The notes under the pieces are model-generated. The model was not told the origin of the DNA. It was given only the letters and a program-made list of their open reading frames with translations, and made no database searches. A program made the position numbers and the translations under genes. A DNA stretch of 64,000 nucleotides from Iphione sp. A-MEVVRFRX5. Taxonomy: Eukaryota. Below, one piece after another: positions 23,425 to 28,370 of this stretch (the stretch's first letter is position 1; each line of letters begins with the position of its first letter). The stretch covers positions 109,120,001 to 109,184,000 of the forward strand of contig OZ320314.1 of assembly GCA_976226885.1 (NCBI GenBank), given 5' to 3'.

Positions 23425-24879
23425 CTCTCTGTTTTGGTCATCAGGCATTGTCGTTTCCTTAAACATTAGACATAAGTAATTAATAATTATAACAAGACTA
23501 CTATTCGATAATCATCTATTAATAGTTCTTACATAATGCACAGCATATATCTTAGTAGGTGCTCCAGAATATATATATATTAGTGTTTACTCAATACTGA
23601 TCTAATATCATACACATAAACAACAATAACGCCCGTTATGAACAAACTATATATATATATGAGTAATCTTCATAATAATGAATATTAAACAAGTATTAAC
23701 CTCATATATTGATGAGTCGTGCCAAACAGCTCCTCTTCTACGCCTGCTCATATTTAGACAAATACGGTCTCGGCACTTGTTCACAGCACACCAACACGCA
23801 ACAGCTGTTGCTATTGAAGCACACACTGACATTACCACGGTCACCACAAGTAAAGACGTTCCTATCCCATTATTCGCTTGTCTTGATTTACTGTTGTTTG
23901 CGGCATTGTCATCTTCATTGCTTTCTGTCGTTAGTGGTAATACTCTTGTCGTTAAGCTACTTGTCAAAGCAATAGTTGACTCGCCTCGTATAGACAGTGT
24001 TGACAGCCAGGTTCGTAAAGAACTTGACTGTGACGGCGAGCTGAGTGTTTTACCCATTTCTGTGGTTGGCGTCCTTCTCGACTCAGCGGAAGAACTAAAT
24101 GATGCTGTCAACACAGAAGTCGGGGGTGAGGAACTGGCAGGGTAGTTTGAAGTAATAAAAGGAAACTTTGATGATGAAACAGTGGTGGTGGTGGTGGCGG
24201 CGGTGACGGCAGTGGCTGTGGTGGTGGTGGTGGTGGTGGTGAAGGGTCTTGTTGTGACATCAGTACTGTCACTGGAACGAGAGTCAATATCAATTGATGA
24301 AAAGGGCGTTTTAAAGCCAGTGCTAGCAGACATTGAGTTTTGTGTAGATGTTCTCATATGTTTGGTAGTTGCTGTTAAATTCTCAATCTGTGTAGTGGAG
24401 GAAATTTCTTTAGATCCTATTTGATGAGTAGTTATTTCTTCATTTCCAGGACTTGTTAATTTGACTTGACTACTGCGCAGTAATGAAGAGAATGTGCCAA
24501 TAGACACACGTTTGCTGGGCGTGTGAGTACTTGGCTGTATACTCGGTAACGGATCGCTGCAGTCTGATAGCACGGTAATTCCATCTGGAACTTTTGCTAG
24601 TGATTCGCACATAAACTCAACGCCTTGGTGTCTAATGTCCATAAACCGAACGTTCTTAAATCTGGCAAACACATCAGCTCTAACTTCGCGCACCATACAC
24701 CCACCCCAATCAAGTCCTTCCATCATCTCGTTGCTCGTAAAAGCGACAAGAAAGGGGTCCAAGTTGCCTCTACATCTCATGACGGGCGGCTCGCATCTTC
24801 CACACCTGATCGGACATTCTGATGAAACAAATGAGACTGTGATTAGCCAAGTCCAAACAATAATTCCTTTCCTTTTCAT
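23425..24879 (-). CDS. Type-I membrane protein A: signal peptide, LRRNT-like Cys cap, short LRR-like segment, Ser/Thr mucin stalk, TM helix, short spliced tail
   Basis: The signal is MKRKGIIVWTWLITVSFVSSE, the cap CPIRCGRCEPPVMRC, the LRR-like segment LDWGGCMVREVRADVFARFKNVRFMDIRHQ, and the TM LLVVTVVMSVCASIATAVACWCAV. Exon 1 is 24879-23701 with a phase-0 donor, and a candidate 33-nt exon lies at 23457-23425. Confidence 0.8.
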
Positions 24880-25042
24880 TTTGATATCCTTGAATAACGT
24901 CGCCAACCGTAATTCGTTAATCTTTTTTCAATCCAGGCTCCACGGTCCGCAACACTGCCTCCTATTCGATGGATGCTCGCATTCTGCTCATCCAACAACT
25001 TCACTAACCACGTCCCATCTCCCTAGTGCAAACACATCCTGA

Positions 25043-25243
25043 CTACTGATGAAATTTATTACCCTTTCGACCTCTTTCCCTTACTCTTATCTCGATACCG
25101 ACGTTCTTCAGAGTAGTCGTTAAGATATTTACGACCGTTTTATCACCCCTTACCCTGAAGCGACCCCTTCCCAGTGGTGTTATTTCCACGGAACAGTCCA
25201 TTTTAGATAACGTTGCCGTGGTTTCACGTTTAATCGTGTTCAC
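25043..25243 (-). CDS. Small basic ORF of unknown function between the two membrane-protein genes
   Basis: It is 66 aa from GTG (52 aa from the ATG at 25201) and not low-complexity. No family was recognised. Confidence 0.35.
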   Translation of the reverse strand: MNTIKRETTATLSKMDCSVEITPLGRGRFRVRGDKTVVNILTTTLKNVGIEIRVRERGRKGNKFHQ

Positions 25244-25501
25244 TTTGACCTATCCACTCTTTCGTTCCAAATTTATCAACCACTTTCAGATGTTTCGTGT
25301 CTGTGATCTGGGCTAACTTGTCAGTGTTCACTTTTCACTTTCTAATAAAATAAAGTACCCTGGAAGACTTAATTGCATAGCTATGTCTTCTCATTTGTCT
25401 CACTGTTTTATTGCTCATTCCACCCTGACACCCCTTGAGCCATCATCGATCACCCCTGCCTCGTTTTCGTTAGTTAATTGCGTCACATTACTGTCTTCAT
25501 C

Positions 25502-26912
25502 ATGGTGCTGCACGCACTTATTATTCTGTCTTTACTTCATATTTCTCATCAAAGCGAGGATTTGTGCGGAAGATGCGTATGCTATGATGAATCTGTTCAT
25601 TGTTCGGGCATTGCTACATCATTCTTCTATGCTATCCATCATCAATACCCCAGGTTTTTACGCCTTTATTTAAATGCACCGCACGTCGTCGACCCTGAAG
25701 AGGATTTTCGCAAGCAGCTGAAGCACGTTTTCCCCAACCTGAAACTGGCTGAAGCAATTGGACAGGAAAACAACATTATGTTTCGGATGTCGTTTCCCAA
25801 AAAACCAGCTCTCCCGTCAAGCGATGATGTATCAACAAGTAGTTATTCGCCTGACTTGAAAGTTTTTTCTCCCACGTCTGCACCATCGGATTACAAGAGT
25901 CGACCGCAGTCTCACTCCACTCCAGTCCGCACTATCATCATCGTGAGTCAACCCCACTCTAAGTCGCAGTACTCGACCGCCATACCGGGTAACAAGGAGC
26001 TGGACTACTCGTCACTCATAGAGGCTATATCTGAGCATGTTTCTAATTCTCCACCACTCACTGACAGCTCGACAACAACAACACACAGTAGCCTCGACGT
26101 ACTAATACTTGTCTGCACTGGCACAATACTCACAATTGTAGTTATTGCTGCAATACTGTTCCCGTGCATTCGGTTTAGGCTATATGAGTCTCTACCGTGC
26201 ATTCAGCCATACACCGGCATCTCAACACCGTCATCAACAGGATCGCCTGCCCCGCTAACTACACCAGCGCACACGTATGTATTATTATATTATATGCACT
26301 GCTATGTGTTCTGTGTGTGCTTACTTTGTACCATTAATACCATTTCACTACATGATTGTCACTATGTGTGCCGAGGTGATTATTATTATTGTCACCCCTT
26401 ATTAATATTAAATCTACTGCTTGGTGTCTATTGATCATGTGTGCCACTACAGAATTAATGATTAATGCTTGTGGTAATGAGTCAGTGAAACAGCTCCATC
26501 TTGTGTTTGCGGTATTTATTATAGTGCTACTGGACGTGCTGCATCCCATCAACCGCGCTCTTCTTCTGCATTTGCCTCTTGCCTGCATTCTCTTAGACCC
26601 TCTACTGCTCCTGTTACACCTTCGCTGTTTGAGTCCATTCCTCTTGACATATTTTCACCTGCAACAACAACTGTTCCCACCCCTGAAGTACCGCTCATCA
26701 CTAGAGACAGTTACATTTCTCGCTTCCCGTTAGTGACTATGCCACCAATCACACCACCCACTAGTTCTACTTCAACTTCAACAACCACTTCATCAACACA
26801 GTCAACTCCCTTTCGCCTACCTCGTCCATTAATATCCCTACTACCAACTCCAAAGTCTGTTTATTCAACACCAGTCTCTACACCCAGTCTACTTCCGTCA
26901 CTCTCTACACAA

Positions 26913-26945
<33 letters not shown>

Positions 26946-28370
26946 GTTACTGCACCTGACTCATTATCCTCTATACACAATGACAATTCACAAACTGACA
27001 CTCTCACCTCAACAGACGCAGTTCAATATGCAACTATCCGTCAGCCCTCCCCCCTTTCATCCCCAAACCGTGCCCGCCTCATTACATTTTCACCTGTTCC
27101 TACTTTCATTCCCCCAGACTCTTCTTCCCCTATTCCCCCTCCCTTTCCTTTGACACCTGTTATGAACTGTACTTGGCCTTTAACTGTTTCTTCTTCTTCT
27201 TCTTCTGTTTCTTCTACTTCTGTGACTTTCACTTCTACTATGACTACAACTCTCAGTGCGGCATCTTCGACTACTAATGCTCCAACCAGTACCAAGGCCA
27301 ACCCGTCCGGACCTGAATCGCCCGTCCTTTTTGCCATTACTCCCCGTCAACCTCTTCGTTGCCGTCTCATCATCAATAAGCCACCACCACCGTCTCCAGC
27401 AGCCAACTCTGTTCCGGTTGTGTCTTCTCACTGCGTGATGTCAACAAGACCACTTGCACAGCCTTCTACTTCTTCATCACAGTGTAGGTCTGCCATTCAT
27501 CCAACCTCAGTCCCTGCATCACAGTCATCAAGTGGAGGACAGTCATCAAAACCTGCTTCGCAACCAACATGTGGTGGACAACGTTTATCATCACCAACAC
27601 TGTCACCGTCACCGACACCTCTTCAGGTCACGAGGTGCACCACTTCAAGAAAGTTGCCCTCACACTCAATACAGAGCCTCGAACGCCCTTCCACTTCTCC
27701 AGCAAGAGTATTGTCGGAGTCGTCGCAGACCAACGGACATGTTTTCACTCCTTCAAAAGCTCTCACACCGCCTACAGCATCGCGGCTTGGGTTCCTCTCT
27801 GCTTCATCGTCATCATCATCGCACCCTCCGCATGCTTCATCATCAACAACGACTGGGCCATTACCTTCCTCATCCACGTCAGGACTGACAGACGACCCGT
27901 TTCCCTCCACCTCTTGGCCGATGTCGACTGATGTGACTCCATCAGATCCGCTGTCATCCACGTGTAAGCCGCGTCCGTCTACCTCTGATTCAATCAGGCC
28001 TAACTCGCTTTCGGACTCTTCACCACCACCATCACTGTCTAAACCTCAGTTGTCACCACCGCCACCTACAACACCACCGTCATCATCTTCATCGTCACTA
28101 GCTGATGCCTCCATAAAAAAGAAAAAAAGTCGTTCTCCAACATCAGAGCCGCCTTCATCACCACCACCACCGCTGCCTCCAGCCCCCTTCAGGAAGAGTC
28201 GCACTCCAACGCCAGAGCCATCACCATCCCCTCTGCCGTCACTGCCGTCAGTTCCCTTTAGAAAGACTCGCACTCCAACTCCTGAGCCGTCTCCTTCTCC
28301 ATCACCTCCTCCTCCACCTCCTACCCCTATTCGTCATTCTTCGCGAATCAAATCACGATCAAAATGGTAA
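25502..28370 (+). CDS. Type-I membrane protein B (two exons, 25502-26274 and 26525-28370) with Cys cap, Ser/Thr/Pro stalk, TM helix and a very long Pro/Ser/Thr-rich cytoplasmic tail
   Basis: The signal is MVLHALIILSLLHISHQS, the cap LCGRCVCYDESVHCSG, and the TM LILVCTGTILTIVVIAAILFPCI. A phase-2 donor gtatgt at 26275 matches the acceptor ttatag at 26524, and 69 stop-free codons lead into ORF 26733-28370. Confidence 0.72.

What the first reader, a model, noticed from the sequence alone, without database searches (positions are those of the whole stretch)
23425..28370. Divergent pair of receptor-like membrane glycoproteins: an E3-like host-interaction cassette in a Maverick
Two back-to-back genes each encode a signal peptide, a four-Cys cap resembling an LRR N-terminal cap (both contain CGRC followed by two further Cys), a short LRR-like segment, an O-glycosylatable Ser/Thr stalk and one TM helix. 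Mavericks are thought to make non-enveloped capsids, so surface glycoproteins are more likely host modulators than virion parts. The layout recalls miniature VLR-, GPIb- or TLR-ectodomain proteins and, functionally, adenovirus E3 glycoproteins. A decoy-receptor, superinfection-exclusion or haemocyte-evasion role is inference. I do not recognise this as a described module.
Basis: partly seen in the sequence, partly recalled or inferred. Interest (0 to 1): 0.85.

Follow-up and report, generated by a model that had tools for sequence, protein, structure and literature searches.

The report
Orphan membrane-protein gene pair beside Maverick
Two head-to-head genes for single-pass, mucin-stalked surface proteins do sit just after the capsid and protease genes of an integrated Maverick-like virus element, but they have no detectable relatives anywhere, only one looks (weakly) like a leucine-rich-repeat receptor, and whether the element carries them is untested.

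Summary
Gene A (23647-24879, minus strand) and gene B (from 25502, plus strand) diverge from a 622-bp spacer. Each encodes a signal-like N-terminus, four Cys beginning at residue 22, a Ser/Thr-rich stalk and one transmembrane helix. Their reading frames are far longer than chance gives.

B probably splices into the 614-codon Ser/Thr/Pro-rich frame that ends at 28370, which would give it a long proline-rich cytoplasmic tail. This is my own inference.

The Maverick setting is real but incomplete. The neighbouring 474-aa protein folds as a double jelly-roll major capsid protein. An rve-chromo integrase, an adenain-like protease and a P-loop ATPase are also present. No protein-primed polymerase and no terminal inverted repeats were found in the window.

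The LRR reading is marginal for A: every PDB hit is an LRR protein, best E=0.026. It is unsupported for B. A and B are not significantly alike overall; only the caps match, at P about 0.01. Neither protein has a homologue in the large protein collections. Structure prediction of A's head failed.

The likeness to adenovirus E3 is an analogy only. Maverick cargo genes, including a membrane glycoprotein, are already published.

My best reading is lineage-specific cargo genes for cell-surface binding proteins (confidence 0.45). Neighbouring host genes are the main rival.

The parts
23647..24879 (-). Gene A, single open frame from the first ATG to the stop (410 aa). This splice is not tested.
24820..24879 (-). 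A: signal-peptide-like N-terminus, residues 1-20
   Evidence: hydropathy and the -3/-1 rule, (heuristic)
24559..24819 (-). A: Cys-capped head, residues 21-107. It has a four-Cys cap, then two LRR-like units (Cys61 sits at the Asn-ladder position), then a stretch like the start of an LRR C-terminal cap (Cys91, Cys107).
   Evidence: PDB phmmer: LRIG1 E=0.026, TLR3 E=0.13, TLR4-VLR E=1.8. No Pfam hit. AF2 failed.
23857..24558 (-). A: Ser/Thr-rich stalk (49% S/T/P), with a short run of Thr codons
23782..23856 (-). A: transmembrane helix, residues 342-366, followed by a basic, Cys-rich short tail
24880..25501 (.). Divergent intergenic spacer of 622 bp between the two start codons. It is the presumed shared promoter region.
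   Evidence: no promoter evidence obtained
25502..26274 (+). Gene B, predicted exon 1. It holds the signal-like N-terminus (residues 1-17), the four-Cys cap and head (18 to about 95), the Ser/Thr stalk (96-193), the TM helix (198-223; 26093-26170) and a juxtamembrane stretch with two YxxL/I motifs.
26275..26524 (+). Predicted 250-nt AT-rich GT-AG intron of gene B (GTATGT ... TATTATAG). This is my own inference from frame compatibility and continuity of composition. The exons were not joined and no RNA evidence exists.
26525..28370 (+). Gene B, predicted exon 2: 614 codons, 57% S/T/P, with 26 PxxP motifs, four poly-Pro runs and a repeated PFRK-S/T-RTPTPEPSPSP unit near the end. It would form a disordered cytoplasmic tail. 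Alternatively it is a separate gene starting at the ATG at 26739.
17712..18371 (+). Context: P-loop NTPase with Walker A (GATSTGKT) and Walker B (IIFDD), at the position of a packaging ATPase
   Evidence: motifs read directly. Only weak P-loop hits. The assignment is inferred.
19247..20374 (+). Context: rve integrase with a C-terminal chromodomain
21100..22524 (+). Context: double jelly-roll major capsid protein (the family that sources name 'F54H12.2-like')
   Evidence: 76 relatives, best 49% identity. AF2 pLDDT 88.8. Foldseek top hits are the Sputnik, PBCV-1, SGIV and mavirus MCPs and a bracovirus-borne protein, adomavirus, adintovirus and MELD virus proteins.
22490..23002 (+). Context: clan-CE (adenain/Ulp1-like) cysteine protease. 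Its stop codon lies 645 bp from the 3' end of gene A.
   Evidence: PDB: ASFV S273R E=1e-5; adenovirus protease E=0.66

Best explanation
These are two lineage-specific, fast-evolving genes for single-pass (type I) cell-surface proteins. They are transcribed divergently from a shared 622-bp spacer. They lie immediately downstream of the virion-gene block (ATPase, integrase, capsid, protease) of an integrated Maverick/Polinton-like element that has no polymerase gene in this window.

The most likely reading is that they are cargo (accessory) genes of that element, probably derived from host LRR-type receptor or adhesion genes.

Proposed mechanism (inferred):
- The proteins enter the secretory pathway.
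- The heavily O-glycosylated stalk holds a small disulphide-capped head above the membrane of the cell that expresses them.
- The head binds a ligand. In A the head is a minimal LRR module.
- B's long proline-rich tail, with many PxxP motifs and two YxxL/I motifs next to the membrane, would recruit SH3-type adaptors and the endocytic machinery.
- The effect would be to alter the expressing cell's surface recognition, as a receptor mimic or decoy. The proteins would not build the capsid.

Shown: the gene architecture, the chance-excluding open frames, the capsid, integrase and protease neighbours, and the absence of relatives.

Inferred: the splice model, the LRR fold of A, cargo status, and every functional step.
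For: - Architecture and non-random frames.
- A's head matches only LRR ectodomains in the PDB. Its Cys61 aligns with the repeat's Asn position, and FMCES aligns with the start of the C-terminal cap.
- The caps of A and B align at P=0.011, and both start at residue 22.
- Both genes have a candidate AT-rich intron of about 245 nt, 28-35 residues after the TM helix.
- The virion module lies directly adjacent: MCP, protease, integrase.
- GC, GC3 and CpG values of A and B fall within the range of the element's genes, which is weak evidence.
- Published precedent exists for Maverick cargo genes and for a Maverick-borne glycoprotein with a signal peptide and TM helix, for accessory membrane-active genes in adintoviruses, and for polB-less polintons.
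Against: - No terminal inverted repeats, target-site duplication or polymerase gene were found. The element's borders are therefore unknown, and the pair may lie outside it.
- Neither head has a relative, even though genomes with related capsid genes are in the collections. The pair is not a conserved Maverick module.
- B has no LRR signal.
- The structure prediction of A's head was uninformative.
- There is no expression evidence.
- An intron in B and the opposite strand of A set the pair apart from the compact, same-strand, overlapping virion genes.
Confidence: 0.45

Rival explanations
1. These are ordinary host genes, or genes of another repeat unit, that merely neighbour a truncated Maverick fragment. 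On this reading they are orphan mucin-like LRR membrane proteins of the host genome with no link to the element.
For: - No element termini and no polymerase gene are present in the window.
- A 645-bp AT-microsatellite spacer separates the protease gene from gene A.
- A is on the opposite strand.
- The predicted introns fit cellular genes.
- The region is rich in transposons, with two pogo-like copies.
- The heads have no relatives in genomes that carry related capsid genes.
Against: - The pair lies in the same gene-dense block as intact virion genes.
- Base composition does not separate the pair from those genes.
- No host-type orthologue turned up either, so this reading is no better supported by homology.
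Confidence: 0.35
2. These are particle or entry proteins: envelope or attachment glycoproteins that an enveloped form of the element's virion would display, analogous to the nematode Maverick fusogen MFUS-1.
For: - Type I topology next to the virion module.
- Published proposal that some Mavericks form enveloped particles.
Against: - The folded heads are only about 80 residues long, with no fusion-protein-like domain.
- No match to any viral glycoprotein appears in Pfam or the PDB.
- A 614-residue disordered tail is not typical of envelope proteins.
- The pair is not conserved among relatives.
Confidence: 0.07
3. These are decaying or never-functional reading frames: relics of a captured gene duplicated head to head, kept open by low-complexity composition.
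For: - No relatives and no family hits.
- Large low-complexity fractions.
- Both ORF ends read into AT-rich nonsense-like sequence.
- B's signal peptide is weak.
Against: - The frames exceed all shuffles.
- The non-repetitive heads and TM-plus-stop-transfer segments are intact in both genes.
- No internal stops were seen.
Confidence: 0.13

Closest known systems
Small LRR type I membrane proteins with capped minimal repeats and a mucin-like stalk (the platelet GPIb-IX family; also LRIG and TLR ectodomain termini). The GPIb comparison comes from my own knowledge. LRIG1, TLR3 and TLR4-VLR came back as PDB hits.
   Same: The order signal peptide, four-Cys N-terminal cap, one or two LRR units, partial C-terminal cap, O-glycosylated stalk, single TM helix. 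A's residues 46-93 align with the last repeat and cap start of LRIG1 and TLR3.
   Different: - E-values are marginal (0.026 to 1.8), and there is no Pfam LRR, LRRNT or LRRCT hit.
- The cap spacing is off by one residue from the usual CPxxCxC pattern in both proteins.
- A's C-terminal cap has two Cys rather than four.
- B shows no repeat signal at all.
- No homology to any named member was found.
Maverick cargo genes and the Maverick fusogen MFUS-1 of nematodes (Widen et al., 10.1101/2022.07.12.499685)
   Same: Non-core genes carried beside the virion module of a Maverick. MFUS-1 is likewise a protein with a signal peptide and a single TM helix.
   Different: - MFUS-1 is an 866-aa herpesvirus gB-like class III fusogen with a large folded ectodomain. 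A and B have small Cys-capped heads on mucin stalks and no similarity to it.
- Cargo status is not shown here.
Adenovirus E3 membrane glycoproteins
   Same: Small type I membrane glycoproteins encoded in a variable cassette next to virion genes of a double jelly-roll capsid virus with an adenain-type protease.
   Different: - No Pfam E3 family matches either protein.
- The likeness is one of layout and presumed role only.
Adintovirus and polinton accessory genes (Starrett et al., PMC8502044) and polB-less polinton variants (10.1101/2025.02.07.637071)
   Same: Animal Maverick-type elements with variable accessory genes, some of them membrane-active. Variants in which the polymerase is missing or replaced by transposon cargo are described.
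   Different: The described accessory proteins (PLA2X, GasderminX, cupiennin-like) are virion-associated membrane disruptors, not receptor-like ectodomain proteins.

Membership tests
LRR ectodomain proteins (LRRNT - LRR - LRRCT) | N-terminal four-Cys cap recognised by the family model | tested here: not met
   No Pfam LRRNT hit for either head, even at E up to 10. A loose four-Cys pattern is present in both, with spacing off by one.
LRR ectodomain proteins (LRRNT - LRR - LRRCT) | Repeats of the LxxLxLxxN/CxL type detectable by sequence | tested here: inconclusive
   A: all six PDB hits are LRR proteins, best E=0.026, with one regex match (MEGLDWGGCMV). B: no hit in PDB, Pfam or the 1.84-billion-protein HMMER scan; its four hits were repeat-inflated matches to TPR-type proteins.
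LRR ectodomain proteins (LRRNT - LRR - LRRCT) | Curved solenoid fold with capping disulphides | tested here: inconclusive
   The single-sequence AlphaFold2 model of A's head has pLDDT 32.6. There are no relatives from which to build an alignment. B was not folded.
Adenovirus E3 membrane glycoprotein families | Sequence match to an E3 family model (CR1, CR2, gp19K and the like) | tested here: not met
   No Pfam family matched at E up to 1 for the whole proteins or E up to 10 for the heads.
Maverick / Polinton element | Double jelly-roll major capsid protein | tested here: met
   The 474-aa protein at 21100-22524.
Maverick / Polinton element | Retrovirus-like (rve) integrase | tested here: met
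   19247-20374. The rve match scores 31.2 bits, E=2.7e-7, just under Pfam's cut-off of 32.6. A chromodomain is also present.
Maverick / Polinton element | Adenain-like cysteine protease | tested here: met
   22490-23002: ASFV S273R E=1e-5; adenovirus protease E=0.66.
Maverick / Polinton element | Packaging ATPase | tested here: inconclusive
   Walker A and B motifs are present in 17712-18371. No family hit; only weak P-loop matches.
Maverick / Polinton element | Protein-primed family B DNA polymerase | tested here: not met
   No polymerase domain in any of about 30 ORFs scanned across the window. The 1462-aa ORF has only zinc fingers.
Maverick / Polinton element | Long terminal inverted repeats and a 5-6-bp target-site duplication | tested here: not met
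   No inverted repeat brackets the block, apart from a (TG)n/(CA)n microsatellite pair without a duplication.
Maverick cargo gene | Located between the element's termini and present in other copies of the same element | not tested
   The termini were not found. The look-up of contigs that hold related elements was left out (see referred steps).
Maverick fusogen MFUS-1 / class III fusogens | Large gB-like ectodomain | tested here: not met
   The heads are about 80 aa. No viral glycoprotein appears among the PDB or Pfam hits.

The most novel reading that the evidence does not exclude
A Maverick-type virus-like element of an animal carries its own pair of receptor-like LRR-mucin surface proteins. 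One of them has a long proline-rich signalling tail. The element would use them to change how the cell that expresses it is recognised or contacted. This would be a host-interaction cassette of a kind not yet described for this virus group.
Probability: 0.3. Interest if true: 0.6.

Novelty: new variant of a known kind. Interest (0 to 1): 0.4.

Why it matters
If the pair is truly carried by the element, Maverick-type viruses of animals can pick up and keep receptor-like surface proteins, and not only enzymes, toxins or a fusogen. That would widen the known repertoire of their cargo. It would also offer a handle on how these elements deal with host cell-surface recognition. If the pair is only a neighbour, the finding reduces to two orphan mucin-like membrane genes beside a polymerase-less Maverick remnant, which is unremarkable.

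Tried and rejected
- Word-indexed searches of 5.8 billion proteins with the heads of A and B returned nothing.
- A full HMMER scan of 1.84 billion representatives with B's head gave only four repeat-inflated hits to TPR-type proteins. I rejected them as spurious.
- Pfam, NCBIfam and PHROGs scans of A and B, whole or in parts, gave no family.
- The single-sequence AlphaFold2 model of A's head was unusable. I therefore ran no fold search on it.
- I searched for element termini with seeds of 14, 10 and 9 bases. Only the two pogo-like genes and a (TG)n/(CA)n pair came up. The microsatellite pair brackets the stretch from the ATPase gene to gene B neatly, but it has no target-site duplication, so I treated it as chance.
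- I considered the 1462-aa ORF as a replicase. It shows only C2H2 fingers, so I rejected that idea.
- Base composition, GC3 and CpG do not discriminate between element and host origin.
- The bacterial-type promoter and terminator scan of the spacer was at background level and is irrelevant to a eukaryote.
- The spliced model of gene B was searched exon by exon only. The joined protein was neither built nor searched.
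Full report
**What is there**

The flagged stretch holds two long reading frames that point away from each other.

Gene A runs on the minus strand from the first ATG at 24879 to the stop at 23647 (410 aa). Gene B starts on the plus strand at the ATG at 25502. The two start codons are 622 bp apart.

The two proteins share one layout:
- Both begin with a hydrophobic, signal-like segment.
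- Both have their first Cys at residue 22, followed by three more within 15 residues. These are at 22/26/29/36 in A and 22/25/27/34 in B.
- Both continue with a Ser/Thr/Pro-rich stretch: 49% S/T/P over residues 108-336 in A, and 47% over residues 96-193 in B.
- Both have exactly one strongly hydrophobic helix (A residues 342-366, B residues 198-223), followed by basic residues.

A loose four-Cys cap pattern occurs three times in the window, and two of those are these genes.

The stop-free runs of 419, 318 and 629 codons exceed every one of 300 dinucleotide-preserving shuffles of the same segments.

**Gene models**

B's open frame runs on for 53 codons of aromatic and hydrophobic nonsense-like sequence after a consensus donor (GTATGT at 26275). 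An acceptor (TATTATAG, ending at 26524) leads in phase into the frame of the 545-aa Ser/Thr/Pro-rich ORF. That frame is already open from 26481, upstream of its first ATG. The S/T/P-rich composition stops at the donor and resumes at the acceptor.

I therefore read gene B as two exons, 25502-26274 and 26525-28370. The 614-codon second exon would form a disordered cytoplasmic tail. It has 26 PxxP motifs, four poly-Pro runs and a repeated PFRK-S/T-RTPTPEPSPSP unit.

This intron is my own prediction from a script. No tool or relative confirms it. The exons were searched separately and were never joined.

Gene A may be spliced in a similar place. There is a GT at 23700, 28 residues after the helix. 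The 3' end of A cannot be settled without RNA data.

**The neighbourhood**

Upstream on the plus strand lies a compact, partly overlapping row of open genes:
- A NADAR-domain protein (17031-17576).
- A P-loop protein with Walker A and B motifs (17712-18371).
- Two small unknown ORFs.
- An rve integrase with a chromodomain (19247-20374).
- Two further small ORFs, one of them very basic.
- A 474-aa protein (21100-22524).
- A 170-aa cysteine protease (22490-23002).

The protease matches the ASFV S273R protease (E=1e-5) and, weakly, the adenovirus protease.

The 474-aa protein has 76 relatives of about 437 aa, from molluscs, cnidarians, amphioxus and reptiles among others. Some are named 'F54H12.2-like'. 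The best is 49% identical. With an alignment of 65 of them, AlphaFold2 gave a confident model with pLDDT 88.8. In the PDB its best structural matches are the major capsid proteins of Sputnik, PBCV-1, an iridovirus and mavirus. Among predicted viral structures the best matches are a protein carried in a Cotesia bracovirus (26% identity) and adomavirus, adintovirus and MELD-virus capsid proteins. It is a double jelly-roll major capsid protein.

I saw no internal stop or frame break in the ATPase, integrase, capsid or protease frames, so the count of breaks there is zero.

The element as it stands in this window is nonetheless incomplete:
- No protein-primed polymerase domain was found in about thirty ORFs scanned across the window.
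- A penton gene was not identified.
- No terminal inverted repeats bracket the block.
- Two pogo-like transposase genes, 73% identical and inverted, flank the region at 14977-16599 and 33045-34658.

Polinton variants that lack polB or carry transposon cargo have been described in insects (10.1101/2025.02.07.637071).

Without termini I cannot show that genes A and B lie inside the element. A's 3' end is 645 bp of AT-rich microsatellite away from the protease stop.

**Are the heads LRR caps, and are the two genes related?**

For A, a phmmer search of all PDB sequences with the 105-residue head returned six hits. Every one is an LRR ectodomain: LRIG1 (E=0.026), four TLR3 entries (E=0.13 to 0.35) and a TLR4-VLR hybrid (E=1.8).

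The alignments place A's residues 46-93 on the last repeat and the start of the C-terminal cap. A's Cys61 falls at the Asn-ladder position, and FMCES falls opposite FLCDC and FDCTCES. This picture is coherent: cap, two repeats, truncated C-cap. It remains marginal statistically. Pfam finds no LRR, LRRNT or LRRCT domain even at E=10, and the single-sequence structure model was useless at pLDDT 32.6.

For B there is no signal at all:
- The PDB search gave nothing relevant.
- Pfam gave nothing.
- A full HMMER pass over 1.84 billion representative proteins gave four hits. All were produced by one short query segment matching many repeats of TPR-type proteins, and they are spurious.

A and B are not significantly similar overall. 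BLASTP gives E=0.42, and 278 of 2000 shuffles reach the Smith-Waterman score.

A local profile alignment does line up the caps over 24 columns: CGRC, then V/M-x-C-x-G, then F-x-x-A, at P=0.011. Three further features fit an old head-to-head duplication:
- The identical position of the first Cys.
- The unique CGRC.
- A similar candidate intron position.

None of this proves the duplication.

The word-indexed searches of 5.8 billion proteins found no relative of either head. Those searches see only proteins of 0.55 to 1.75 times the query length. The nearest capsid relative is only 49% identical, so close copies of this element are not in the collections. Even so, no detectable homologue exists in the genomes that carry related elements. 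The pair is not a conserved Maverick module.

**What it most likely is and does**

I commit to the following reading, with confidence 0.45. The genes are lineage-specific cargo genes of the Maverick-like element, probably of host LRR-receptor origin. They encode mucin-stalked surface proteins whose small capped heads bind a ligand at the surface of the expressing cell. B's proline-rich tail and its two juxtamembrane YxxL/I motifs would couple it to adaptors and to endocytosis.

Only the architecture and the neighbourhood are shown. The fold, the splice, the cargo status and the function are inferred.

The rivals are:
- The pair is simply host genes next to an element remnant (0.35). The missing termini and polymerase, A's opposite strand and the predicted introns speak for this. 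Nothing tested excludes it.
- The proteins are particle or entry proteins (0.07). This is unlikely given the tiny heads and the absence of any fusogen-like domain.
- The frames are decaying relics (0.13). The intact, chance-excluding frames argue against this.

**Comparison with what is known**

By layout, A works like the smallest LRR type I membrane proteins. Membership of the LRR family is not established: the family models do not recognise it.

The adenovirus E3 analogy rests on layout only.

Nematode Mavericks carry cargo genes and MFUS-1, a gB-like fusogen with a signal peptide and TM helix (10.1101/2022.07.12.499685). Adintoviruses carry accessory membrane-active genes (PMC8502044). Receptor-like LRR-mucin proteins are not among the cargo types described in the papers I read.

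I did not look up the contigs that encode the nearest capsid relatives, although this would be the most direct test of cargo status. It is listed as a referred step.

The N runs at 50999-51183 and 56060-56196 were left alone.

**Verdict**

I class the finding as a new variant of a known kind: putative cargo membrane-protein genes beside a Maverick virion module. Interest is 0.4.

Noticed in passing
window 17031-17576 (+): A NADAR-domain ORF (Pfam E=2e-14; also a weak match to an NADAR anti-phage family) lies directly upstream of the P-loop ATPase gene. It may be another accessory gene of the element.
   Followed up: partly
window 14977-16599 (+) and 33045-34658 (-): Two pogo/Tc5-like DDE_1 transposase ORFs lie in inverted orientation, about 73% identical at DNA level, and bracket the virus-like block. 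The second has almost no CpG (o/e 0.02 at 52% GC), yet its 537-codon frame is open.
   Followed up: partly
window 17595-17650 and 28519-28557: A (TG)n and a (CA)n microsatellite form an inverted pair that brackets exactly the ATPase-to-gene-B block. About 12 further bases match loosely. No target-site duplication was seen. This is probably chance, but it is the only terminal-repeat-like feature found.
   Followed up: partly
window 45397-46104 and 46341-47048: A perfect 708-nt inverted repeat with a 236-nt spacer, containing 31-nt tandem repeats. It could be a foldback-type element or an assembly artefact.
   Followed up: no
window 10132-14520 (+): A 1462-codon ORF with N-terminal C2H2 zinc fingers, long Asp-rich (GAT)n runs and strong GC skew. 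It has no polymerase or helicase domain.
   Followed up: partly
window 21100-22524, residues about 225-262: The capsid protein carries a Gly/Ser/Thr-rich insertion of about 40 residues with low model confidence. Most relatives (430-440 aa) lack it.
   Followed up: no
window 20726-21100 (+) and 20340-20729 (+): A 124-aa very basic ORF (possibly a core or DNA-binding protein) and a 129-aa ORF lie between the integrase and capsid genes. Neither matches any family, and a penton gene was not identified.
   Followed up: partly
window 60857-62105; 32603-33014; 34803-35178: A 51-nt satellite array lies near the window's end. Tandem repeats of 98 nt and about 80-160 nt lie on either side of the second pogo-like gene.
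   Followed up: no
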